Source: Zygnema circumcarinatum SAG 698-1b (taxonomy: Eukaryota > Plantae > Zygnematophyceae). From it: 64,000 nucleotides of DNA. How positions within the stretch are numbered: position 1 is the stretch's first letter; each line of letters begins with the position of its first letter. The notes under the pieces are model-generated. The model worked only from the letters and a program-made list of their open reading frames with translations, was not told the DNA's origin and searched no databases. A program made the translations under genes and the position numbers. Where the stretch lies: the NCBI GenBank assembly GCA_037447605.1, contig CM074810.1, positions 1,336,880-1,400,879 of the forward strand, written 5' to 3'. Positions 15,318 through 61,563 of the stretch are shown in pieces.

Positions 15318-16901
15318 TCGTATGTAACAGAGCTCTTTTGCTACAATAAGACTGTTGGTAACAAGAATATCACGCCTATTTGGTTCTTTACCAAGCACGT
15401 CTAATAATTCACAAAGAGAGGGTACAACCATCCCGTTAGTGTTGGTAGTTATAGTTCCTGGATTCTCCCCTCCTAAGCTACAGAGGGCCGGTTTTTTTTC
15501 GGTTCTTTCCCCTTCGCCGAGTCGCCGGCTCCTTCGGACATTCCTTTGCCATGTGTCCAGTCGCCTGACAACGGAAACACCGACTTTCCTTCTTCAGTTT
15601 CTCTTCCTCCTGCGGACTCAATTTTCGGATCTTTCCACGCGGGGAAGGAGCTGGCGTGTCCCCGTGGGTCTTTCTTTTCATCCCACGTCCATTCTTTCGG
15701 CGAGGTCGTTGGCTAGGTCCGCCACGACCTAAAGTGTTGCCTGCTGTGCACAAAGGACGCCCGCATCTGACGCACGAGGTGTGATAATGTCACGTGGCTC
15801 AACACGTGGACTACTGTAGCAGGCTAAGATCTAATACCCCAAAATGCTTCCCTCGCTCCTCACAGAATTTCTTCCAGTCACTGCATATCGCGGGCTGCAA
15901 GCTCTTAAACACTCTAAAAGCTTCACCCCACAGTGACGGGTAGGCATAGTTCACCCACTCCAGAGGTGGGCATCGGGTGGCGTGGAGGTAGACCTGCCCT
16001 AACCACTGCTCAATCGAGCAGTCGGTCTCGGGGCGCTCACCCCACCCTGTCAATAGGGGTCACCTCGGCCCTATTACTGTGGGGCGTGGTCCGGGTCGGG
16101 ATGATCCCACATCGCCAGTGGGAGTCCCAAAAGGGATTCCTCCACCACTGGGTTGTGCGTCCACCTCCATAGATTGACTCCCCCCGTAGTCGAGACCGGG
16201 GGAAGAGCTTCTTGCCGCAGCAGGGTGGGATACAGGGACTGCAAGAACAGGGGACGTAGACACAGCAGGGGGTCCCTATAGGGAGGTCCCTCGCAGACAC
16301 GGATCTAGACTACATCAAGGTGCGTTACGTGCGGTATGGACACTGACAGTGCAGCCTGGGGACTACCGGACGTACCTGTAGTCTTCCGCAGGCTCTCCCT
16401 GACTTCCGCCAGGTCCTTTTGCAAATCATCCCGGACGCTATCCAGGAGATTGCGGTAGTTCTCTGCAGCTGTCTGTTGATAGAGTTCCAGCTGCAGCATC
16501 CGTTGAGCTTGCAGAAGGTACTGCTCCCTCATGGCACATACCAACTCCCGGAGCTCAGCCTGCTCCGTCCGAATCCAATGCCCAGCCCTTACGGAAATGG
16601 GCTGCTCCATCAAATGTGGGGCCGTCGGGTCCCCCGGTTCTTCCTGCCAGGGCCCCTGCCCTGGCGCAGGTCGCCACTCCGGGGAGTCCGGAATCAGCGG
16701 CGACCAAGGTCCGGAGGCAGTGGAGCTGACCATAGGCAACTCCGGCCGCTCCACCTTCGTGGGAGCTGCTCCTGCTGATTCCTCCCCCCGTGCCTGGTCC
16801 TCCTCGTCCCGAATCAGCCGCGGTGGTGGTTTTGAGAGGCCCGCATCCCCTCCAGCTCGCTCCAGACTATAGATCCGTACTATACACCTTCAGGTTCGAT
16901 A

Positions 16902-23500: not shown

Positions 23501-25213
23501 GTGAATGAAGACAATCGCAACTGGTGGATAACCACCATCACCAGTTCAATGCATGGTCGTAAACATAAACCCTCAAAGCAAGAAGTCCCCTATAGTGCTC
23601 CGTACTACTCGACTTTTTAACCTCCCCAATGCAAATGAGATGACCCACCGACTAGCCCATCCGCTTTGCTGTCAGCAATAGACGAGAGAGCGCTCCCGCC
23701 CCGCCGAGCAGCCGCTGTCCCAAAAATAAGGACAGAAACAAAGGCGTCGCAGACCTGAAAGGTAGTCCGGAAAAAATGCTGCGAGTGAACGTTTAGCTGC
23801 GTCGGGAGAAGGTTGGTCGGCCAAGAGGAGGTCGGATATGGGGCCGAAGAAGAGGTTGAAGAGAGAGTGGGCTTCACGGAGCACATCTCTTAAGGCCTCC
23901 GTGCGTATGTTTTCTTCTACTCCAGCTGTTCCGCCCTTTTCCGCCACCTGAATGACCACAGGGGGATGCCTGAGTTCGAAATTCAAAACTTTACGAGAGT
24001 GCAGTGGTCAGCAGAAGTTTTAGATAGGCTAGTCGCTCTGAAGTTTGCAGAATATGGAGATTGTTTCGGTCGGCAAAGAATGCAGTGGTAAGGTGATGCC
24101 GCATACCTACCAGCACCATCCAGATGGACGGCTCGCATTCCAGGAAAACATGAATGTGCTTCTCAGCATCCATGACCTCACATGGATGCGCCGGGGAAAA
24201 CACTCTGTTCATGCACAAAACAAAAAACATCAACAGCCAATGTTCTTCTGTCCGAAGAGTCGAGAACGTGGAGGTATAACCAAATCACGCATTTCAATTT
24301 GCACAGTGCAAGCAATACGAACTGCCTGTGCATTGTGGGAAGACAGTGGCAGCAGCGTATGTGAAAAACAAGGGTACACATTACTTGTTAGAGGATCTCG
24401 CTGTCAATGCTGTGTCGCTAAGTATGTTTGAAGAAAGATTCAACAACAAGATTCTAAAAAAAAAAAAAAAAAAAACCTCGGCATGAGACAAGAAAGGTGG
24501 TTGCTACTAGTAACCGTGCAAAACAATTTGCATGAGAAATAAGCTTACATCAGATAGGGAGATGGTTTTAACTTCACCAGATAAGTTGTTGACTAATTCT
24601 CATAAAGCAAACCACGTCGATAACTGGTTTGTAATACAACTCATGCAGTGGGCGATATGCCAGGGAGCAAGAATTCCATATTGTTGAAAAAAATTGCAAA
24701 CACCAAAAGCATTCCCTACAATCGACACCATCAAGGGAAAAACCAACAGAGCTCCAGTCTACGCCTTAAATATTCTTACCCCATTTTCCGTTTTAACTCA
24801 AGCAACTGGATTTCATTTCCTTCTCTGGCACTTTGGTCTTGTTGGAGGTTCGTTCAGGAACATATTTCGAGACAATCTTCTAGATATCATAAAACATAGG
24901 TTTCTTCTAGAAGAAGCATCGAGCAGCATGGTGCTCCACCACAAACGGTTCTACAAATTTCGAGCATGTAGATGATGATAATTTGATAGTGAGAGACTCG
25001 GAGAGTCGAAAGATCAGAGGATTAGAGGAGGGCTAACCGGGTGAAGGTGATGAGGCCCTCCGCCAAGCCCACGAGAGAGAGCTGCTCCCACGGAGCAGTG
25101 CGCTCCGGAAAGAAGTACAAAATCTTGTCCGCCTCCTCGCCTTCTTGCTGACCTCGCCTCGTATCGAACACACAGAGGCGTAAGGCCTGCGCGGCGCTCG
25201 CAGGCCCCACCAT
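20572..25213 (-). CDS. CCZ1: Vacuolar fusion protein CCZ1 homolog (MON1-CCZ1 Rab7 GEF subunit)
   Basis: 9 exons: 25213-25038, 24204-24111, 23947-23755, 23400-23303, 22954-22856, 22496-21819, 21602-21447, 21236-20974, 20602-20572. N-terminal longin motif LCVFDTRRGQQEGEEADKILYFFP...VGLAEGLITFTR; C-terminal ERASETLLLASEAVE. Confidence 0.92.
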
Positions 25214-25221
25214 TGCTTCAG

Positions 25222-25223
<2 letters not shown>

Positions 25224-25290
<67 letters not shown>
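25224..25290. repeat. (GA)n microsatellite just upstream of the CCZ1 ATG
   Basis: Direct inspection; (CT)n on the sense strand, typical of plant 5' leaders. Confidence 0.95.
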
Positions 25291-25292
<2 letters not shown>

Positions 25293-25609
25293 GCGGTTAT
25301 TCCCCAGTTGTCACCCTTCAAACTTTCAAGGCCTCCGAACTCCACACTCACTTGGAAGCAAACTAAAAAACGCGAGGACCCAGCCAATCTCGACTCGCCA
25401 CGAAAGCACTTGTGCACACGTGGCGAGCCACCATTTGGAGGAAGGAAAGAAGGAACGCAGGAATGCCCCGCAGGGCTGTTCTGTGATCTCAGTTAGGCCA
25501 CTGTCCCTCCTGCCTGTGTAGCTGCGACTGGAGCATAGAACCAGGTACACAGAACCAGCGCCTTGGACTCCGGCTCTCCCCGGCCTTGCTCCCTCACTCC
25601 CCTCCAGCC

Positions 25610-27841: not shown

Positions 27842-30800
27842 ATGGCATCGTTTAGTCAGCCCGCTTCTGCAAAGATGTTAAGGTCAGCAGTTGGAAGTAG
27901 TATTTCCGAACCGCGTTTGGTGTTGAATGCAGCATTTACAAGGAGCTGTCGTCGAGGCTCTATGGAATGTAGGCTTCGGATAGGCATGAGGCTGCAAAGA
28001 GAAGGGAAGAAGAGCATGAAGCTTCTCAGATTGAAGTACTCAGACTGTGTAAAGTTAAACAGTCCTTTTTTCGATCCTTTCAACAATGGCAGGGCTCGAG
28101 CCAGGAGCTCAGAGCTGGTGCTAATGGATGCAACGGCCCAGGACGCGCAGCAGCAGACTGACTCTCCAGATGCTTCTGAGAAGTCTGCTGAGGAAAGCAG
28201 CTCTGAAGGGCCAGGATACCATCTCGTTACCAGCATGCGGACACCTTACTCTGCTCTCACTATTGTGGATATACCCTCAAATGCTGATGGCTCCTTGGCT
28301 GGAGCAAGGTTGCTTTTGCTGGATGATTCAGGTAAACACTAGTAACCACAAGGCAGTTGCGGGCGCAATCACGCTTTGATGCGTGAGCTTTGTTGTTGGC
28401 TTTATTCTTCTTTCTCGTCTTGTAAAGACTGTTTTTGATCATGTGGTTTACACCTGTTTTAGATCGTCTATGACTTGTGCAGGACACATTCAAAGTCTCT
28501 ACTATGAGGATCGTTTTTGGACAGGCTCGTACTGGGTATGTCACGAATTTGTAGAATAAACCTCGGATCCATGCTTGAATGTTGTGGGTTTTTGCTGAAT
28601 GCCATGTGAGCGGCGGCTGCCTTGTTATGGTTGGCCAAAGTTCTACCGCTGATTAATTATTTTTTTTTAGCTCAAAGCAGGGTTTCCTTTATCATAATGT
28701 TCTGAATTGATGAATTGACAGCCTTATATTGCATATAGATGTTTCGCAGATGTTTGTTGTTTGCCGCACATTGACTTAGAATTTCTTGATCAGAATGCCG
28801 CACTCCTTACCTTAGTTTGCAATTGGTTAGTTGTTAATGTCAGGTTTCATTGCTGCGGGAATTTCGCATTTGACCTTCAACTACGGAATGAAGTCAAAGA
28901 GGTCTAAATGAAATTTATTGTCCTGAAACTTTTGGAAACGTTTTTTAAATGCTGAAACTGCTTCTGAGTGTGAACTTGCGGTCTGTTGCAGGATGAATTC
29001 GCTTCAATCGTTCCACTTCTGCCAGAAGGTCCAGTCGGCTTCCTTGGCCTGGTGTGTGCCTCAAGCTTCGGAGAAACCGGTAGAGGGTGAAGGCAGCTGG
29101 AGAGACTTCCCGGGGATGAATTAATGTGAGGATGACATTCCTTCCGATAATCAACTGACAGAATGAACTTGGACATGTTCCCTTATCGGTGTGTGTGGGT
29201 GGTCCTGTAATGGAATGGAAGGAGGGAGTGAATGGAGATGGATGATACCTGCGGCTCTTGTTTGGCGTTGTTGTTGAGGGCAAGTTTCTCATGGGCAACG
29301 AATTTTCTTATTTATAATCGTGTAAATGTGAGTGGCAGTGGTGTTGGGAATGGTCTCACATTGCGTACAGTGTTTTATGGTTCTTTCACCCCCTCAGTCT
29401 ACATGATTTTGGAACTTATGTTTAACTGTTTAATGTATAATGCGATCATTTATACGATTGGTCAATGTTTCCTTGTCTAACTGATTCATGGCAACAGCAA
29501 CTGAATATAAACTTCTCAAGTCAAGTTGCGAGAATTTGGTATATGTGAGACTTTGCACTGGCGTGATGCTTCTGTGGTCGACTGTTGTAGTTGTCAAGTG
29601 CAAAGTTAGGGACTGTGATGATTCATAAGGTCTCGTTCGTCGTAATGGCGAGTACCAACAAGCCTTGACGACCATCCTTTATATCACCACTCATAACCTG
29701 AGTCCCTTGATTGCTTTTGGCAACACTTCTCTCTGCTTTCAGAGTCTGGGGAAGTAATTGACTTTAAAATTCTTTTGCTCAACCTTTGTCGGAGGTGCAC
29801 TGGCACAGTTGAAGATACTATGAGCATGAAAACCGTTATCGTACTGACAAGGAGTAATTTTCAGATGAATCTCTCTTGTGACTCATAGCTTGCGCCTTTT
29901 TAGTTTTTCATTATGTAATTAGTAATGGCTCCTTGTGTGGTCTGTCTATCGCTTTTCTCCTGGTTTGTCCGTTTCATTCTGCCTGAGCTACTTGAATTGG
30001 GCTGGAAGTCAGGGACGATGATGTATATTTGTAAGGTCTCGTTCGTCGTAATGGCGAGTACCAACAAGCCTTGACGACTATTCTCTATATCACCACCCAT
30101 CGTCTGATGTCCCATGGCTGGCTCCAGTAGTTTTGTTCTTGCTGTCAAGAAACTGCGATGGTTTCCCTCTAATGTTTGAAGTATACTGGTTTTCGCTTGG
30201 TAAACTCTGCAACCGATTGCTTTGCCAGGCAATCACTTGAACGTGCGATGTTTGCTATTCAAGTATCTCTATTCATTTCGAGAGAAGTTTTGAAGAGGAA
30301 ATACCCTCTGCATCCGCTTGTCATGTTGACTTTAATTGGAGATCAAGACAGCAAGCAAGGAATTTTTTTTTTTTTTGTGCAATTTCTGAACCTGATGTGG
30401 CTTCCTTTTGGGACAATTGCAGACTTGTGTGAATAGTGCTTGGTTATGCAGTTATGTTAACGACGGTATAGCTCTACTAGGCCGCAGTATTGTAAGGTAA
30501 TAATGAAATCCTTCCTCGGTGAATTGTATACTTCATCGCTGATTGCTCCTCCATGATTCCCTTTTTCATGCCTGCAGGCAGGTGGAAGCGCAGCGCGTGT
30601 CATGAGGAACTTATGGCCTGCAGTGCATCTTGTGGCCTGGGAGATTGATGAGATCGTAAGTACTTTCATTTGCATACCGTAAAGCTAAACTTTTTTTAAC
30701 ATTTAATAAGTAAATATTCCAAATGTCTCAAAATATTCAATAATTTCTTAGTTAGTAGTCATTAAAGCTTTCATTTGCAGGAATGGTACTTTGTATGAAA

Positions 30801-32144
30801 GCAAGGGCGAAAAGTTTCATCATTCTATACTGCTAACTTTGTGGTTCGTAAATTGTATTCCGCCCGTGATACCTGTTCACCTGAGTTGGTGATGCCTTTT
30901 GTTTCATTCCTAATGCAAGGCTGGGAGACAAAGCTGAGTCTCTCGATTTGATGATTTTTATTTTGTGTCCAGGTGGTCGATATGGCAAGGCAACACCTGG
31001 CGTTAGAAGACTTGGAACAGCCGACTTCAGAGGGTGGCACTTTGACCGTTCACATTGGAGATGCGTTGGCAGAAAGTGCTGTGGTCGATGGGGGCTTCGC
31101 AGGTGAACGTTTGACCTCAAAAGAAGTCGATCCCCTTTGTCTCCAACTACCGTCGTTTAAACGATGGAGCTTGAGTTATAGGAGCAAGAGTTTGTGTTTT
31201 AAAGCAACAATCAGACCCAGAAGTTAAGCATGTGTGAGCTTCTGGGATACAACAAGATGCTATTGGCCACTGTGCATCTTGATTAATTCTGTCGCAGACA
31301 GAGGATTGTACACTTGTTGTCACATTGCTGCCCACTCATTTTACATGTTTGTTTATCTGTGTTTCAGGTTTGGTTGTAGACTTATTTTCTGGTGGACAAG
31401 TGCTTCCCGAGCTTCAGCAGGTTCTGCCCACCCCCCGCCCAATTTTTCGATTGAGCTGGATTCTGCTTCTTCTGAGTTTTCCATGTCTTCGCCATTTTTT
31501 GTATTGTTCAGCCCAAAACCTGACTCTGGTTGTGCCGAGCAACTCGTTCTTACACTCAATCTTACATTTTTTTTCTTGTTCTCATGATGCAAACAGCCAC
31601 AGACATGGGAATTGCTTAAGAGGCGGCTAAAACCAAACGGCCGCATCATGGTGAACTGCGGAGGAAAGACATTGACACCGGCTGCTCGTGAGAGCGGTGC
31701 AAATGAGGCTGATCCAGGAGAAGTAGCATACAAGAATACCCTCTTGTCTCTCTCTGCCGTGTTTCCAGGGCAGGTGAGTAATACGTTTACACATACATGT
31801 TGAAAGTGCGAAGTTCACAGTTTCAAGTGGGGAGGGGCATATGTCTCCATTCGACACATCATGGAGAGAGAGCGAGAGGGGGAGAGGCAGAGCGAGAAAT
31901 AGAGAGAGAGAGGGGAGGGGCATGGGGCGGACTTGCGGCTGCCAGAGGGTAGTTTGCACTGAGAACATGTGCTGAAGGAGATGTTCTCGGTGCTCTATTG
32001 CAGGTGAGTGTCAGAGACATCACGGATGCAGACAGCAACGTGTTGGCCCTCACTGGACCCCTTCCGGACCCTGCCGCCTGGGCGGCAGCACTGCCTGCGC
32101 CGCTCAGCAGGAACCGCAACTTGTGGCGCTTGTCCTGCGCGTGA
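27842..32144 (+). CDS. Plastid-targeted SAM-dependent methyltransferase, spermidine-synthase-like family
   Basis: 8 exons: 27842-28331, 28483-28535, 28992-29051, 30578-30655, 30973-31102, 31368-31420, 31597-31773, 32004-32144. Motifs WTGSYWDEF, GFLGLAGGSAA, WEIDEI, HIGDAL, VVDLF, LKPNGRIMVNC; transit-peptide-like N-terminus. Confidence 0.9.
29608..29707 (+). ncRNA. Box C/D snoRNA, copy 1 (intronic, dual 18S guides)
   Basis: Terminal stem AGGGACT/AGTCCCT; C box GTGATGA 29615-21; guide AGGTCTCGTTCGT 29628-40; D'-like CGTA; C' TTGACGA 29665-71; guide CACCACTCAT 29685-94; D box CTGA 29698-701. Confidence 0.85.
30011..30113 (+). ncRNA. Box C/D snoRNA, copy 2 (intronic, dual 18S guides)
   Basis: Stem GGGAC/GTCCC; C-like ATGATGT 30018-24; identical guide AGGTCTCGTTCGT 30034-46; C' TTGACGA 30071-77; guide CACCACCCAT 30091-100; D box CTGA 30104-07. 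Confidence 0.82.
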
Positions 32145-43100: not shown

Positions 43101-45601
43101 ACGCAGGTCAGTGCACCATGGGCCAAATGGACTGCCCAATTCCATTCTTAAGTTTCACTTCTTTCAAGTTTTCCCTTAAGAGCCGAAGTCCAAAGGACCA
43201 ACCTTCAACTCTAACTTCCGTTACAGCGGAAAAGCGGGAGCAATGGCAAATTTTATTACCAACAGCGATAGGTGATGGATTGAAAGGTCCCCTTGTGAAT
43301 TGAAAGGTCATCTCTTGCTTGGTACTGATGCAGGGCATGCACGAGTATGCAGAGTATGGGCATGCTGCTCATTGGCTCTATAAGGAAGGAGACACTGCAG
43401 ATCTCACAGTGCAGGCCTTAACATCCTCCAGTATGGATTTCACTGCTGCTGCTGCTCAGGCAGGCAAGAGAAATCTCAGAGAGGGTGACATAGCTACAAC
43501 TTCAAGCCATAATGCACAGACTGATGCATTGGATTCAGGCTTGAGAGATATCTATAAAGAGAATAGTACAAATAACATTGCAATTAAGGCCAGTGAAGGA
43601 GAGGGATTGAAAAGCCTCATCTCCAATAGTGGTGAATTAGAACATAGTCAAGCGAGTTCATTAGCTGAAGAGAGACCAAGCGAGGGTGTGGAGTTGCTAG
43701 ATGAAGAAGCAAAGATGCGAATCAGCGACATTGCCAGTGTGAGCAGTCCATTTGAAGAGGAGAATGAACATGTCGCGAAAGATTTGGATGGATTGAGCAG
43801 TAGCAGGCAGCAGGAAGGGAGCAGCATCAGAGAGGAGACAGAGGGAGAGAGCAGCAAGATGCCTCTACTTCCATCGACATGGCCCGTTGCAGTGGGCCAT
43901 CCTGCTCTGCGGATAGAGGAGGGCCGACTGCTCGCAGCTGTTGTAGTCAGGTATGTCACACTCTTCCATTCTTTCACCTGCTTGGGTTCAAACGATCAGT
44001 TCCTTTTCACGGGCTCCTTTTTTGAAGAAAATCAGAGTTTTAGCATTAGTAAGCATGTTCTCATCAGTCGCCATGGTGGAGAATCTACAAATCAAAGTAG
44101 CCACTTTATCTTCACTATATCGTTGATCACTTTAGGGGCAAGGTTTACGGTTAAGGGACAAAGACACCCATGTTTTCATTAACACCGTTTACCTTTCAAC
44201 GCTCTGATGTTCTTGACACAAAATGAGTGGTAACAAGCAGCAGGGTTGTTACACCAACGCTGGCATTATCTGAAACCAAACAACATAATCTTACAAAAGG
44301 AAACAGCCTGCATTTGTGGAGAAAAACTGACTCTATTTCCTTTCCCTTTTTCTTTTTCGTTTGATATTTTCTCCTTTTCCCCCTCTGCTCTTTTCCCTCC
44401 CCTGTTTATCGCCGCAGAGTTGATAATTCTGGTCGAGACCTAATTGTTGCTGTCAGCTTTGCCTTGCGAGCTGCTGAAGCAGTGGCTGCGGGGAGGAGTG
44501 GTAGTCAGTTGAGAAGGTGGGGGACATATGCTCAGCTTCTGCATAAGGTGCAAAGGCAGTGGTGGAATGCTCCCGGCCATGGGGATTGGAGCACCTGTTT
44601 GGAGCATTACACGCTCTGCAAGGATGGAATTTACCACAAGGTGACTCACACATACCCCACGGAACAAAAGCCAATCTTTGCAGTCTTAGGGAACTTATGG
44701 TGAAGGTCGCATGCTAAGGTGAATGAGAAATGAAGGAGTCACTTTCTTTTTTTGGTCCAATGTGTTTCTGCAGAAGGACCAATTTGATCGTGCACTCCCG
44801 ACATTCATTCAGCTGTTAGAGCTGAATCTTCAAGAGCAGGCAGAGTACGCGGAGGTGACAGCACAGGTGAAGGCGGGAGAGGAGGTGGAGTCTACCATGC
44901 TTCACTCTCCCATTGGGGAGGAGGAGGGGCCGACAGAAGAAAGGGCACTGTCAACTGCAATGCGGTTGAATAACAAAGTAGGGTCTCTCACAATCCAGGA
45001 CTCTCTTGCTTTGAGAACCGTAGCAATTCAAGCAGAGTAACTGTCAATTTCCTATCGCGTGTTACTCGTGGTTCTTACTCTCTTTGAGGGGGCGAGCAGG
45101 TCCGGCTGCTTCGCTCTATGCTTCAGTGGGAACAGGAGTTGAGACACGAAGCTGCAACCGACGGCTCTGTGACCGCATTGGAGCCCTCAGCGCAGGAGGG
45201 GGACAGAGAGGGAGAGGAGGCAGTGGCCCTTTCAGAGGTCCTTATTATCCGTTGGCCAGGTACAACCTGTTTCATCCCTAATCCCTTCTTCACCCCTCTC
45301 TTTCTCTCTTCTCTATTTCATTTCATTTTCATTTTTTGCTTTTTGGGTAGACTGGAGGGGAGCCATGTTATTGACCTTGACTTTGACCTTGACTTTGGCC
45401 TTGATCTTGACTGGAAATGACCCAACTTGACGGTCTCATTGGGCCGCAGGAGGCGACATTCTCCGGATGCCCCGAGGTAGTGAGGCCTGTGATGCGGCGC
45501 GGCAGGCCGGAGCGGAGGGCCGGCTGGTCACGATCAATGGGCGAGTCGCATCGCCCCATACAAAGCTGCATGATGGGGACTTCGTGGAAATCCGGCAATG
45601 A
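36157..45601 (+). CDS. RSH: Plastid RelA/SpoT homolog, (p)ppGpp synthetase/hydrolase with C-terminal TGS domain
   Basis: 18 exons: 36157-36592, 36970-37028, 38130-38261, 38553-38693, 39024-39092, 39418-39512, 39832-39964, 40259-40435, 41003-41190, 41733-41799, 42400-42533, 42753-42819, 43044-43106, 43334-43950, 44418-44640, 44774-44977, 45100-45259, 45450-45601. HD domain ([26 protein letters not shown]), synthetase ([33 protein letters not shown]), TGS ([20 protein letters not shown]). The start codon is the least certain part. Confidence 0.93.
39754..39796. repeat. (CT)n microsatellite in RSH intron 6
   Basis: Direct inspection. Confidence 0.9.
40065..40119. repeat. (ACT)n microsatellite in RSH intron 7
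   Basis: Direct inspection. Confidence 0.95.
42901..43000. repeat. 20-bp minisatellite TTGTTTATTTATGTTGTTTA x5 in RSH intron 12
   Basis: Four identical units plus one with a single mismatch. Confidence 0.95.
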
Positions 45602-45949
45602 AGATGATGTACATGCATGCATGCATACATACACTGTGGTGTCGAGGTGGTTAGTACATATTTGGGTGAGCATGAGCAGCAAGCAGAACGAAATAATTGA
45701 GGCTTGGGACTGCTGCTCCGGCAGAGGCGAGGAGAGGGCCTGCCTGGAGTTCAGCATTTCCTTTGAGCTGAGAGGGTGGGAGTGTACAGTTCTCATACAG
45801 TGGGTGGAGGCGGGAGGGCCTCCAGGGAGGGTAGGCACGTGGCAATCTGTACTTATCATGTCTTGTAAATGAGCGTGGCCTACACCCAGTTGCAGCGTAT
45901 GGTGTTCCCTGTACTCGTGGCCTCGCTCCCCCTCCCTTCCCTTCTTGGT

Positions 45950-48385
<2,436 letters not shown>

Positions 48386-48807
48386 ACTTCCCCTCTCTCC
48401 CCTCTCCCTGTATCCCTCCCTGCGCTCCCCCTCACCCCCTCTCATAGCGGGCAGTAGTGCCCTATTCCCGTTCATCGAACGCTCTCGTCCTCACGATTCA
48501 ACACGCGTTTGTTTACCGTTGCGCCTGCTGCCGCTGCCTCTGCCGCGGCCACGTGGCAGCCTCTTGTCGTTGTCTTTGCGTTTTCCTGTCGCGTGTCTTG
48601 CTGCATTGCTCTGTTTTTGTTGTTTGTGCTTCTTTTCGTTTTTTGTTTTTTGTTTTTGGTTGTTTTGCTGCTGTTTTGCTGCGGTTTTTTCTGTTCTAAC
48701 GTTTCTCGCCTTGTTTTCTGACATTTTCTGCCGTAGCTTGTCTTGCTGTGTTGCGTTTTTCCTTTTGTCTCCCCCTTTGCGTCTATTCGTCCTTGTGCTT
48801 CTTCTTT

Positions 48808-48817
48808 NNNNNNNNNN
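48808..48817. other. Assembly gap (10 N)
   Basis: Run of N. Confidence 1.
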
Positions 48818-50241
48818 GTGCTGCAGTTGTTGGTGACCGTGTTGGTGGACTTCCGCCGCTCCCTCCTCGCGACGTGCCTCACATCGGTGACCTTTGCGGC
48901 TGCTTCTAGGGCTGCGTTGTTGTGCCTAGGCGTAGTTTTCCGCTCCTAGCTTCGTTTTATTGTGTTTCGGTCCTTTGTGACCAGTCCTTCGTGGTTCCAC
49001 ATTTTGCCTTTATCCATGTAAATTTGATGGCGAGGCCATCGCGAGTTCAATGAAAGTTTGCGTTTTCTCTCGTCCTCCATATCTAGAACAAGACGGTGCA
49101 CATTGCTCCTAGTTCGGGACAACTGTCTCAATCGTTCCTATCGGACGGTCACGCACTGCTCGCAATCGAACGGACCAAAATCACGGTCCGATTGCATCCA
49201 AAGGCTGAAATCTGTCCGATCGGAAGCTTTCAGCGAGTTTTGGGTTTCCTCGGTTGTACGGATCACATTCGCTGACCGTACGATCAGCGTACGGCTCTGA
49301 AGCGTGCGATCCATGCTACGACGTCTGTCCTACTTGCCAGTTGCGTAGTCAAAGTTTAACTGCGAACAGAACTGTGCCAGTTTTTCATGGAAACGGAGGT
49401 TCTGGAGCCCCAAAGGGGCGAGGACCCCCTCCTGGAAATCCCTCCGCCAACGCAAGCTTTGCCGGATCGCCACGTGTATGCTTTTATATACGTGGCAAAT
49501 TTCTATTGGCCAATGCGCGCCTGAGGAGGACGAGCGGCTGCTCTGCGGTGCTGGAGAAGAGGAGGACAGTTCGCTATCATTGAGAAAAAGAAGGAGACGA
49601 AAACTTCTGCGTTTTGGAGCGGAGGCGACGCAATAGCAGCAGCAGCAGCAGCAGCAGCAGGCAGGTCGGGTTGTTATCTGGGGGGGAGCTTGCTCCGGTG
49701 CGAGAGGCCTGCCTGGGACCGTGCGGCTTATAAGACTTTTTATGTTTAAGTTGCTTGATGGCTCCTCTGTATTGCTCGTCTCTTCTCTGGCGTCTGCGTG
49801 TCCATGCATTTCTTCCTCGCTTCCTTTTAATTTACTCCGCTTCCTTCTTCTTTTGGTTCCTTTTGCAAGCTGCTTCCTTGGTGTTCAAGGAAAGAGTGTC
49901 ACAGTCACCTCTCTCTCTCTCCCTCTCTCCCTCTTTTCTTGCCAGCTGTCAAGCTGAGCTACAACTTCGAATGACATTTTTTGTGGCCACACGTTTGTTT
50001 GTGTTGCTTGCCGCCCACTTTATATTGTCCGCATTCTTTGAGCATTTGTGTCTCGCATTCTAGTGAAGAAACTTCTTTCTGGAATATGCGTTGGTGTGAA
50101 CAACGACATACTCATTCATCCATCCAATCGATAACTTCGGTGTTAGTTTATCGTCATTAGAGCCGCTTCAAATGTTCACTTTTGAATGTGCATGTAAGGT
50201 CTCCTTTTTGACATGTTCTTCTGTGTCTCCTGCAGGCAGTT

Positions 50242-59421: not shown

Positions 59422-61563
59422 TTAGTCAGAGTGTACGGCCGATGCTATTGTGGTCGCCAGTTGCTGCTCCACCCAGGTCTCAATCATATCCTGAAAACAA
59501 AAAAGAGAAAGTTGAATCAAAATTTGCCATTAAACGGTAACGTTAACCAGACGCAACATCACCATTCAGCACATTGGGAAAATTACTCCTTAAATACCAC
59601 TCACTTACCTGTGAATTCACAGACTCGTCTGCAGGAACTTCATGCCCAGCACCTCGGAGGGTGTAGTGAGTAAGAGAGGCAAAGGTTCTCCTGTATCCGG
59701 CCAGCTGTCCGTTAACATGCCAACGTTCTCGCGGCGATTGAAAGAAAATATTAAGGTGACCCCACTGTAATGTGCGCATCCAATCTTCAGACGAGGCAAC
59801 TCCATCCTTAATGTCGTATAAGCCCTGATAAAGGAGTAAGGGAAGCTTGGGAAGGAGAGCCTCCACCATCCACTTAGTGCTCTTCATGGTGTCATTCCTC
59901 ATGGACTTCCGAACACGCGGGTTGCACGAGACCCACGTTGTGTTAATGTTAGCATTAAGAGCCACTTTTATCTGTAAAACCAGCGCAAATACGAAGGGTT
60001 CGTTGAGGACGAGAGCGAGTGGGGGAAGGGGGGGGGAAGAGTTGAAGGAGGTACAGAAGAGTGATAGGCGACCGGAGAGAGCGAGGAGCAGGTGGGACAA
60101 AAACAAAGCGTGAGAGAGGGCAGAAGAAAAGAGCTGCCTGGGGAGGGAGAGAGGGAGGGAGGGAGGGGAGCCCTGCTCGATGAACGCACCTGGGGCTGAT
60201 TCAAGAACAAAGCCAGATATTCTTGCCCTTGACTGTTGTAGTGGTATGCGGCGTCGCGCCGCACATCCAACAAGGTGGCGAGCCCACTCACATTCTGGCA
60301 AAGCCATTCAACAAGCACAGGAGGAACGAAGTCACAGATGAGCAAAACGTGGGAGGCATGGGGCTTGGCAGCAAAGGAGACGCAGACAGGAAGGGTCTGG
60401 AAAAAGATTATTTAAAGCAGCAGCTCTTTGTCAAGACTGTAGAAGGGAGGGACAAATTGTGAAAAAACATCCAATCAACCTGTACCAGAATTCCTTTAAC
60501 TGCCAGAAAGTAAGCTGGTTTTCATATAAGATGTTCTTTCACCCCACTTCCGATAAGTCTGGTCAACCTTACACATGTCTGTCTAGTACATCCTTAGTAT
60601 TTTGTGTTCACCCTAAAGCTTCTAAGCTTCTAAGCTTCTTCTTCTCCTCTTCCTCTCAAAGGTATCCAAAGGTACTCGACTCACCTGAATCCAGTTCACA
60701 AGCTCCGTTCTCGCAGTGTATGCAGCTTCCCACTCCTCTTTATCTATGAGCGCCACAACTGCTACAGCCAAGGCTTCGACATGTAGCTTCTGCTGATAGT
60801 CAATCACTCCAAACTGATATGCCGCCTCCGCGTGTCCTTGAACTTGTATTTTTGGATCAGTGAGCCCATTCCCAATAACAAGACCTTCAAGCCTAAAAGG
60901 GCGCTCATATCTCTCTCCTGAGCCCTCTCTCACTCCCGTAGCTTTTGGTAGTCGCTCAAAAGGTTTTCCCTCGGCCTCCTCTATCAGCTTCACTACGTGA
61001 TATCCAAAGGCAGGCACATATTTCCCGGCATAACTCTCTCCCGCAACAAAAAATGGCCTGTTGTGAAAGGAAGGATGCGCTTTGTAAAACTCTGTGACTG
61101 CAGAGTAGAGATGTGCGGCAACGCTTGGCTGATCTGTGGGAATATCTTCATCTTTTTCTGCAATACTGTATCCTGTTCCCACCGGACTATCCACAAAAAG
61201 CATGCCATAGCGCCGATTCCATGCGCCCTTGTTCTCAACCACCTGCAGCTCACTGTTTATCCTCCACCTTCCCATTTCATAGAAATTTCCGATTCCTCCA
61301 GAGCATCCCGGCCCTCCTTGCAGCCACAAAATGATCGGAACTTCTTCAAGTTCTCGCTGCGGGTCGACAGCTTCATAAAACGCGTAATACATCTGAGCAT
61401 TGGAGGATGCGTTGGCCGTCAAATATCCGCAATCTGTAGGCCTTTCTTGCTTGAGAAGCATAGCGTAGGGCTTTTGTGCAGTAAAGAAGCTGTGCGTGAA
61501 GTTAGGGTTGAAGCAAAGCGCCGCCAAGAGCACCAAGAGGCCGACATAGAGCGACCACGCCAT
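59422..61563 (-). CDS. Serine carboxypeptidase-like protein (peptidase S10, SCPL50/CPVL-like)
   Basis: Exons 61563-60685, 60294-60190, 59971-59609, 59490-59422. Signal peptide; WLQGGPGCS, FVDSPVGTGYS, catalytic GESYAG, LLYQGLYD, GAGHEVP. Confidence 0.95.

What the first reader, a model, noticed from the sequence alone, without database searches (positions are those of the whole stretch)
29608..30113. Tandem dual-guide C/D snoRNAs hidden in an intron of a plastid methyltransferase gene
Seen: two ~100-nt paralogs 403 bp apart in intron 3, each with terminal stem, C, D', C' and D boxes; boxes and guides are conserved while flanks diverge. Established: AGGTCTCGTTCGT is complementary to the conserved 18S segment ACGAACGAGACCU, and CACCAC(C/T)CAT to AUGGGUGGUG. 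By the D+5 rule the targets are the A in GA[A]CGAG and the U in A[U]GGG. From memory these correspond to human 18S Am1383 and Um1326 (yeast Um1269, snR55). Inference: one RNA guides both sites. The host is a plastid-targeted enzyme rather than a ribosome-biogenesis gene, which is an unusual host and ties cytosolic rRNA modification to this locus.
Basis: partly seen in the sequence, partly recalled or inferred. Interest (0 to 1): 0.8.

Follow-up and report, generated by a model that had tools for sequence, protein, structure and literature searches.

The report
Two intronic snoZ43 C/D snoRNA copies
Two tandem copies of an already catalogued plant box C/D snoRNA (Rfam snoZ43), which guides two ribose methylations of 18S rRNA, sit in one intron of an uncharacterised methyltransferase-like gene, which is an ordinary arrangement for plants.

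Summary
Window 29610-29705 and 30013-30112 (+) both match Rfam RF00330 snoZ43 over the full model (78.7 and 67.7 bits, gathering 43). They are the only Rfam hits in the 64 kb.

Both lie in sense in intron 3 (29052-30577) of an 8-exon, 393-aa gene that I modelled by hand.

The D' guide pairs perfectly (13 bp) and the D guide pairs over 13-14 bp with two 18S segments 64 nt apart. By the +5 rule the targets equal Arabidopsis 18S A1330 and U1266. RiboMeth-seq assigns both sites to one snoRNA, SnoR32, with a degenerate D' box (PMC8053127).

Its Um1326/yeast Um1269 equivalence is off by 7 nt; that is the U33 site, Arabidopsis U1273.

The "unusual host" claim does not hold:
- The host belongs to a land-plant-wide spermidine-synthase-like family of unknown function, and plastid targeting is only predicted.
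- Seven orthologous loci carry no snoZ43.
- In angiosperm-like contigs snoZ43 sits in polycistronic clusters.
- Intronic snoRNA clusters in assorted hosts are known in the green lineage.

Verdict: a new locus of a known family, of low interest.

The parts
29610..29705 (+). snoZ43 copy A (box C/D snoRNA). With its full terminal stem it spans 29608-29707. C box 29615-21, D' guide 29628-40, D' box (CGUA) 29641-44, C' box 29666-71, D guide 29682-95, D box 29698-701.
   Evidence: Rfam RF00330 at 78.7 bits, E 1.3e-15, model 1-100/100. Boxes located. Duplexes with 18S: 13 bp perfect (D') and 14 bp with 3 G.U (D).
30013..30112 (+). snoZ43 copy B. With its terminal stem it spans 30012-30113. C box variant AUGAUGU 30018-24, D' guide 30034-46, D' box 30047-50, C' box 30072-77, D guide 30088-100, D box 30104-07. 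There is a one-base bulge between the D box and the stem.
   Evidence: Rfam RF00330 at 67.7 bits, E 1.4e-12, model 1-100/100. Boxes located. Duplexes with 18S: 13 bp perfect (D') and 13 bp with 2 G.U (D).
29052..30577 (+). Host intron 3 (1526 nt, GT...AG), the longest of the seven introns. It carries both snoRNAs. Copy A starts 558 nt after the 5' splice site, and copy B ends 465 nt before the 3' splice site.
   Evidence: Gene model built by hand and checked by script. Distances. No other Rfam match with E below 1 in the intron.
27842..32144 (+). Host gene with 8 exons: 27842-28331, 28483-28535, 28992-29051, 30578-30655, 30973-31102, 31368-31420, 31597-31773, 32004-32144. It encodes 393 aa, a spermidine-synthase-like SAM-binding-fold protein with an N-terminal extension of about 120 aa.
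   Evidence: Open frame of 1182 nt with all introns GT-AG. [quoted passage not shown] Family profile against PDB: METTL13 at E 1.3e-5, spermidine synthases at about 1e-3.

Best explanation
These are two paralogous, intron-encoded genes for the plant box C/D snoRNA family snoZ43. Functionally this family is the RNA called SnoR32 in Arabidopsis.

Inferred mechanism. Each RNA assembles with Snu13/L7Ae, Nop56, Nop58 and fibrillarin on its C/D and C'/D' motifs. The D' guide (AGGUCUCGUUCGU, followed by a degenerate D' box CGUA) pairs with 18S ACGAACGAGACCU and places the A equivalent to Arabidopsis A1330 (human A1383) at the fifth pair. The D guide (UAUCACCAC(C/U)CAU) pairs with 18S AUGGGUGGUGGUG and places the U equivalent to Arabidopsis U1266 at the fifth pair. 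Fibrillarin then 2'-O-methylates both sites.

Both copies are transcribed as part of the host pre-mRNA. They are released from intron 3 by endonucleolytic cleavage and exonucleolytic trimming up to the snoRNP-protected terminal stems, as for other plant intronic snoRNA clusters.

Shown here: family membership, anatomy, complementarity, target positions, and intronic sense location.

Inferred, not shown: expression, the processing route, and methylation in this species.
For: - Rfam full-length hits well above gathering, and no competing family.
- Seven homologues, two from the window and five from plant-like metagenome contigs. The two guides, the CGUA D' box and the boxes are nearly invariant, while the internal loop varies and keeps a small hairpin (GGC/GCC against GGUA/UACC).
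- The best duplexes of each copy against a complete eukaryotic rDNA unit are exactly the two predicted sites. The +5 rule gives A1331 and U1267 in that 18S, 64 nt apart.
- Arabidopsis RiboMeth-seq finds Nm at U1266 and A1330, both assigned to SnoR32, and notes that for A1330 the guide is adjacent to a degenerated box D' (PMC8053127).
- The core is conserved between the copies while the flanks are randomised. This argues for selection on both copies.
- Sense orientation inside a clean GT-AG intron.
- No snRNA-type USE next to the copies (the nearest loose match, with 2 mismatches, lies about 250 nt upstream of copy A and the match count is at chance level).
- snoR32 is listed among the seven C/D families conserved across land plants (PMC5122169).
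Against:
- The species' own 18S was not available. Complementarity was tested on environmental eukaryotic 18S.
- Copy A has a C-to-U change in the D guide (a G.U pair at guide position 7). Copy B has a non-consensus last C-box base and a one-base bulge after box D. Either copy could be weaker.
- That Rfam snoZ43 and Arabidopsis 'SnoR32' are the same RNA is inferred from identical dual specificity and the degenerate D' box. It was not shown by a sequence comparison. A separately named Rfam family, snoR32_R81 (I know this name from a paper's table and from memory), did not appear among the matches.
Confidence: 0.85

Rival explanations
1. The two snoRNAs are real but are transcribed from their own promoter inside the intron as an independent dicistronic unit, as in angiosperm snoRNA clusters. 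On this reading they would not be processed from the host pre-mRNA.
For: In angiosperm-like contigs snoZ43 lies in polycistronic clusters with U14, snoR99, snoU83, snR60/Z15 and snoR21b, outside this host gene. Copy B ends 465 nt from the 3' splice site, far from the short distance typical of splicing-dependent animal snoRNAs (the animal distance is from my own knowledge).
Against: Both copies are in sense within an intron. No USE-like promoter element lies next to them. Plant intronic clusters are known to be processed from host transcripts (PMC7671301). No promoter test was possible.
Confidence: 0.07
2. One or both copies are decaying duplicates that no longer give a stable, active snoRNP. 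The sites would then be guided from another locus in the genome.
For: Copy A has a G.U pair in the D guide. Copy B has a C-box variant (AUGAUGU), a bulge after box D and a lower Rfam score. Plant snoRNA families usually have several paralogues (PMC5122169).
Against: 85-89% identity of the cores against flanks at shuffled level implies purifying selection or gene conversion on both. All boxes, guides and terminal stems are intact, and both score far above the Rfam gathering threshold.
Confidence: 0.06
3. The matches are chance or are fragments of antisense rDNA, not snoRNA genes.
For: None beyond the fact that the guides are by nature antisense to rRNA.
Against: E-values of 1e-15 and 1e-12. Only 13-14 nt blocks are antisense to 18S, and they sit at the canonical distance from D'/D boxes. 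Homologues with the same architecture occur in other plant contigs.
Confidence: 0.01

Closest known systems
Rfam RF00330 snoZ43 (plant box C/D snoRNA Z43)
   Same: Full-length covariance-model match for both copies (78.7 and 67.7 bits, gathering 43). Same order of elements: C box, D' guide, degenerate D' box, hairpin, C' box, D guide, D box. The guide sequences are identical to five other snoZ43 loci, apart from one C-to-U change in copy A.
   Different: - The internal loop is longer and different in sequence.
- The scores are lower than for the angiosperm-like copies (85-115 bits).
- Here there are two homologous copies in one protein-gene intron. In three of the four angiosperm-like contigs snoZ43 lies in a mixed polycistronic cluster with U14 and others; the fourth (L032) shows it alone.
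Arabidopsis thaliana SnoR32 (Wu et al. 2021, PMC8053127)
   Same: One snoRNA is assigned to both 18S Um1266 and Am1330, with the A1330 guide adjacent to a degenerated box D'. The window RNAs predict exactly these two sites, 64 nt apart, with a CGUA D' box.
   Different: No sequence of Arabidopsis SnoR32 was available, so identity of the genes is inferred from function. The Arabidopsis orthologue of the host gene has no snoZ43 in or next to it (L130).
Human SNORD30 (U30)
   Same: It guides 18S Am1383, the equivalent of the D' target here (PMC5027482).
   Different: - SNORD30 uses its D guide for 18S A1383 and its D' guide for 28S A3804.
- There was no Rfam match to it here.
- The second target of the window RNAs (equivalent to Arabidopsis U1266) would fall at human position 1319 by the offset. 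To my knowledge that position is not a methylated site in human.
   Same: They target a U in the same GGUGGUGGUG stretch of 18S helix 34.
   Different: Their site corresponds to Arabidopsis U1273, which is assigned to U33/SnoR34 in PMC8053127 Table 1. That is 7 nt downstream of the U targeted here. An unchecked note of this scan (s1-332393) reports a separate U33-like guide elsewhere in this genome.
Intronic snoRNA gene clusters of plants and green algae (rice, Chlamydomonas, Ostreococcus)
   Same: More than one snoRNA in a single intron of a protein-coding gene, in sense, and presumably released from a polycistronic intronic precursor (PMC7671301; the Chlamydomonas title is cited there and in PMC5122169).
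   Different: Here the cluster is a homo-duplicate of one family rather than a mix of families.

Membership tests
Rfam RF00330 snoZ43 | Covariance-model score at or above the curated gathering score (43 bits), over the full model length | tested here: met
   78.7 and 67.7 bits, model 1-100/100, not truncated.
Rfam RF00330 snoZ43 | The two conserved antisense elements (D' guide GGUCUCGUUCGU and D guide CACCACCCAU) shared with other members | tested here: met
   Invariant in the alignment of seven loci, except for one C-to-U change in copy A.
Box C/D methylation-guide snoRNA | C box (RUGAUGA) near the 5' end and D box (CUGA) near the 3' end, brought together by a terminal stem of 4 bp or more | tested here: met
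   Copy A has GUGAUGA/CUGA and a 6-bp stem. Copy B has AUGAUGU/CUGA and a 5-bp stem with a one-base bulge.
Box C/D methylation-guide snoRNA | Antisense element of 10 bp or more ending next to box D or D', with the target at the fifth pair | tested here: met
   13 bp perfect at D', and 13-14 bp (2-3 G.U) at D. The targets are A1331 and U1267 of the 18S in L035, equal to Arabidopsis A1330 and U1266.
Box C/D methylation-guide snoRNA | Accumulates as a stable RNA of about 70-120 nt bound by fibrillarin, Nop56, Nop58 and Snu13 | not testable with these tools
No protein-binding data exist.
Box C/D methylation-guide snoRNA | The predicted target nucleotides are 2'-O-methylated in this organism | not testable with these tools
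   Only the Arabidopsis equivalents are documented (PMC8053127).
Spermidine-synthase-like (PABS) SAM-dependent transferase fold (host protein) | Significant match to Pfam PF01564 or to solved spermidine synthases or methyltransferases | tested here: inconclusive
   - Single exons gave no Pfam hit.
- Relatives reach only 14-19 bits against a cut-off of 22.9.
- A few family members carry a precomputed PF01564 hit.
- The family profile hits METTL13 at 1.3e-5 and spermidine synthases at about 1e-3.
- The spliced 393-aa protein has no reference, so it could not be sent to the database tools.
Plastid-targeted protein (host) | Cleavable N-terminal transit peptide, or experimental plastid localisation | not testable with these tools
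   The host has an N-terminal extension of about 120 aa rich in Ser, Arg and Ala. A review lists At5g44600 as predicted chloroplast (PMC11594162). That the Arabidopsis family member NP_199273.2 is At5g44600 rests on my memory and its chromosome position.

The most novel reading that the evidence does not exclude
The window may come from a streptophyte lineage outside the sampled land-plant clades. In the host-family tree the window protein and one unnamed transcript fall outside the embryophyte group with weak support. The best hits of a neighbouring carboxypeptidase gene are only 50-57% identical, to a lycophyte and to Closterium.

If the organism is a streptophyte alga, these would be algal members of snoZ43/SnoR32. 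The dual U1266/A1330 guide with its degenerate D' box would then predate land plants. A 2016 survey found that land-plant snoRNA families have almost no identifiable homologues in green algae (PMC5122169). The family would also have moved between an intronic and an independent polycistronic organisation during plant evolution.
Probability: 0.3. Interest if true: 0.35.

Novelty: new member of a known kind. Interest (0 to 1): 0.15.

Why it matters
It matters little beyond annotation. The result adds two snoZ43/SnoR32 genes to this genome and predicts two 18S ribose methylations that are already mapped in Arabidopsis.

The modest points of interest are evolutionary. The same deeply conserved guide RNA sits in an intron of a protein gene here, in mixed polycistronic clusters in angiosperm-like contigs, and in none of seven orthologous host loci. 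That illustrates how freely plant snoRNA genes relocate while their guides stay fixed.

The proposed functional tie between a plastid enzyme and cytosolic rRNA modification has no support.

Tried and rejected
1. Expression evidence. The look-up of sequencing runs worked once on the whole gene and gave runs X1-X9, all Logan contigs. There are therefore no read-level data.
2. Pfam on single host exons gave nothing. I reached the family through exon 7 by reference and then through relatives.
3. Conserved host-snoRNA synteny is rejected. There is no snoZ43 in the orthologous loci of Selaginella, Ricinus, Riccia, Calypogeia, Ceratodon, Klebsormidium or Arabidopsis. There is also no host-protein tblastn hit around four other snoZ43 loci.
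4. Extra snoRNAs in the intron or window: none by Rfam at E up to 10 and none by my own scan.
5. An own snRNA-type promoter: USE-like matches are at chance level. One exact USE at 16104 has no TATA box and no RNA family downstream.
6. The synonymy of Z43 and SnoR32 could not be confirmed from papers. The original Arabidopsis and Chlamydomonas papers are not held.
7. Organism identity: run accessions were not found in papers, and earlier scan notes name no organism.
8. The supplement of PMC8053127 is cut and holds no cross-species site table.

Full report
OBSERVATION

The sequence at 29400-30400 holds two similar stretches. Rfam (cmscan, gathering thresholds, whole 64 kb, both strands) gives exactly two matches, both to RF00330 snoZ43, a plant box C/D snoRNA. 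They are 29610-29705 (+), 78.7 bits, E 1.3e-15, and 30013-30112 (+), 67.7 bits, E 1.4e-12. Both cover model positions 1-100 of 100. A permissive scan of the intron (E up to 10) adds only noise from other families.

The copies start 403 bp apart. An 81-nt direct repeat is 89% identical. Over their full length the copies are 85% identical, while the 100 nt on either side are as alike as shuffled sequence (0.58 and 0.55 against 0.57 +/- 0.03).

Anatomy:
- Copy A has a 6-bp terminal stem (29608-13 with 29702-07), C box GUGAUGA, a 13-nt D' guide, a degenerate D' box CGUA, C' box UGACGA, a D guide and D box CUGA.
- Copy B has the same parts. Its last C-box base differs (AUGAUGU), its stem is 5 bp, and it has one bulged U after box D.

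Single-sequence folding recovers the terminal stems and a small internal hairpin.

A crude C/D-box, terminal-stem and rRNA-complementarity scan of my own, run over both strands of the window, returns these two loci and nothing else.

TARGETS

I scanned metagenome contigs for the two proposed target strings separated by 40-65 nt. Of 120 loci, 115 have them exactly 51 nt apart. All nine of those loci that I put through Rfam place them inside SSU_rRNA_eukarya.

I compared each copy with a complete rDNA unit (L035: 18S, 5.8S and 25S). The two best duplexes of each copy are the predicted ones:
- D' guide: 13 perfect pairs with ACGAACGAGACCU.
- D guide: 13-14 pairs, including 2-3 G.U, with (U)AUGGGUGGUGGUG.

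The fifth-pair rule gives A1331 and U1267 in that 18S, 64 nt apart.

The Arabidopsis RiboMeth-seq map lists 18S U1266 and A1330, also 64 nt apart. It assigns both to one snoRNA, SnoR32, and remarks that for SnoR32/A1330 the guide is adjacent to a degenerated box D' (PMC8053127). This is exactly the architecture seen here.

18S Am1383 is guided by SNORD30 in human (PMC5027482).

1383-1326 is 57, not 64. In Arabidopsis the U33 site is U1273, 7 nt downstream of U1266. The human and yeast numbers for the U33/snR55 site are from my memory.

RELATIVES OF THE RNA

Four of the metagenome loci were not 18S but the reverse complement of snoZ43 genes. In an alignment of seven loci, the two guides, the CGUA D' box and the boxes are nearly invariant (the C, C' and D boxes each vary at a single base in one to four loci). 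The internal loop varies but keeps a short hairpin, for example GGC/GCC against GGUA/UACC.

In three of these angiosperm-like contigs snoZ43 lies in a polycistronic cluster with U14 copies, snoR99, snoU83, snR60/Z15 and snoR21b.

A survey of plant snoRNA families lists snoR32 among seven C/D families conserved across land plants. It finds almost no land-plant families in green algae (PMC5122169).

I could not confirm from a sequence that Rfam Z43 and Arabidopsis SnoR32 are the same gene. The identity is inferred from the shared dual specificity and the D' peculiarity.

HOST GENE

Reading the sequence and checking by script gives an 8-exon gene on the + strand, 27842-32144, with all introns GT-AG and a 393-aa product. 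Intron 3 is 29052-30577 (1526 nt), the longest intron. Both snoRNAs lie in it in sense. Copy A starts 558 nt after the 5' splice site, and copy B ends 465 nt before the 3' splice site.

The spliced protein has no reference, so I did not type it into database tools. Single exons gave no Pfam hit. A feature search of exon 1 pointed weakly to the spermidine synthase N-terminal domain (a lead only).

An exhaustive search with exon 7 by reference found relatives. Local BLAST showed that these align with the whole host protein. Searches with two of these relatives showed a land-plant-wide family in two paralogous groups. [quoted passage not shown] The host is 44-48% identical to members of one group.

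Pfam Spermine_synth is only sub-threshold in relatives. A family profile hits the METTL13 methyltransferase domain at E 1.3e-5 and spermidine synthases at about 1e-3 in the PDB. So "methyltransferase" is a fold-level label for a protein of unknown function.

Plastid targeting was not tested. There is an N-terminal extension of about 120 aa. A review lists At5g44600 as predicted chloroplast (PMC11594162). That the Arabidopsis member NP_199273.2 is At5g44600 is my inference.

IS THE HOST LINKAGE SPECIAL?

I fetched the genomic loci of family members from Selaginella, Ricinus, Riccia (intronless), Calypogeia, Ceratodon, Klebsormidium and Arabidopsis. Rfam finds no snoZ43 or any other snoRNA in them. 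Conversely, the host protein has no tblastn hit near the other snoZ43 loci.

The intron position after the GL of motif I appears to be shared at least with Selaginella. So an old intron acquired the snoRNAs in this lineage, or the other lineages lost them.

The literature describes plant snoRNAs as mostly clustered, either independent or intronic in a host gene, and processed from polycistronic precursors. In Ostreococcus only about half of the intronic hosts are ribosome-biogenesis or RNA-processing genes (PMC7671301). Unchecked notes of this scan also mention snoRNAs in introns of other kinds of genes in this genome. A host unrelated to ribosome biogenesis is thus not unusual and implies no functional tie.

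MECHANISM

- Shown: family membership, the full set of C/D elements, the two antisense elements at the canonical distance from D' and D, the targets, and sense location in an intron.
- Inferred from the established biology of box C/D snoRNPs: binding of Snu13, Nop56, Nop58 and fibrillarin; methylation of the nucleotide paired to the fifth guide position; release from the host intron by endonucleolytic cleavage and exonucleolytic trimming.
- Rivals: an internal promoter. No USE-type element lies next to the copies, but this could not be tested further. The other rival is decay of one copy. Copy A has a G.U in the D guide and copy B has a variant C box, but the contrast between conserved core and randomised flanks argues for constraint on both.

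LINEAGE

The organism is hidden. In a maximum-likelihood tree of the host family, the window protein groups with one unnamed transcript-derived protein (62% identical). Together they fall outside the sampled embryophyte group with weak support, near Klebsormidium.

A serine carboxypeptidase-like gene in the window has best hits of only 50-57% identity, to Diphasiastrum and Closterium. A hornwort or a streptophyte alga is possible. If it is an alga, the family would be older than land plants. This is the only mildly novel reading left.

LIMITS

There is therefore no evidence on expression, ends, splicing or methylation in this species.

VERDICT

The finding is real and well read by the first stage. 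It is a new locus of a catalogued family with already mapped targets, in an ordinary genomic arrangement for the green lineage.

Noticed in passing
window 45869-48836: About 2.5-3 kb of almost pure (CT)n/(GA)n dinucleotide repeat (GC skew -0.996, AT skew -0.98). It is followed by X residues in the ORF translation, which suggests N bases or an assembly gap near 48.8 kb. Shorter (GA)n runs also lie near 25.2 kb and 31.85 kb.
   Followed up: no
window 16104-16114 (+): An exact match to the plant snRNA upstream sequence element consensus RTCCCACATCG. No TATA box follows it and no Rfam RNA lies within 800 nt. It is probably a chance match in GC-rich, repeat-like DNA.
   Followed up: yes
window 60622-61563 (-): A long first exon (313 aa) of a serine carboxypeptidase-like 50 gene (PF00450 in all relatives). 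The best named hits are only 50-57% identical (Diphasiastrum, Closterium), so the genome's lineage is poorly sampled in protein databases.
   Followed up: partly
L018 898-2112; L066 495-1059 and 7765-8343; L115 5006-6648: In plant-like metagenome contigs snoZ43 is part of polycistronic clusters with SNORD14 (U14) copies, snoR99, snoU83, snR60/Z15 and snoR21b. L066 carries two such clusters about 7 kb apart.
   Followed up: partly
L126 1501-2580 (Riccia fluitans): The Riccia orthologue of the host gene is a single uninterrupted 359-codon ORF, whereas Calypogeia, Ceratodon, Selaginella, Klebsormidium and the window gene have many introns. This suggests intron loss or a retrocopy in Riccia.
   Followed up: no
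L128 4819-4977; L129 323-610; L121 2869-2942: Other small-RNA genes lie next to host orthologues: a U1 snRNA gene about 700 nt downstream in Ceratodon, an SRP RNA upstream in Klebsormidium, and a tRNA just upstream in Selaginella. This is probably coincidence.
   Followed up: no
window 25022-25417 (-) and 43319-44182 (+): These ORF fragments look, from memory only, like the N-terminus of a CCZ1-type vacuolar fusion protein (upstream neighbour, divergent from the host gene) and like a RelA/SpoT-homologue (RSH) domain. I did not search for either.
   Followed up: no
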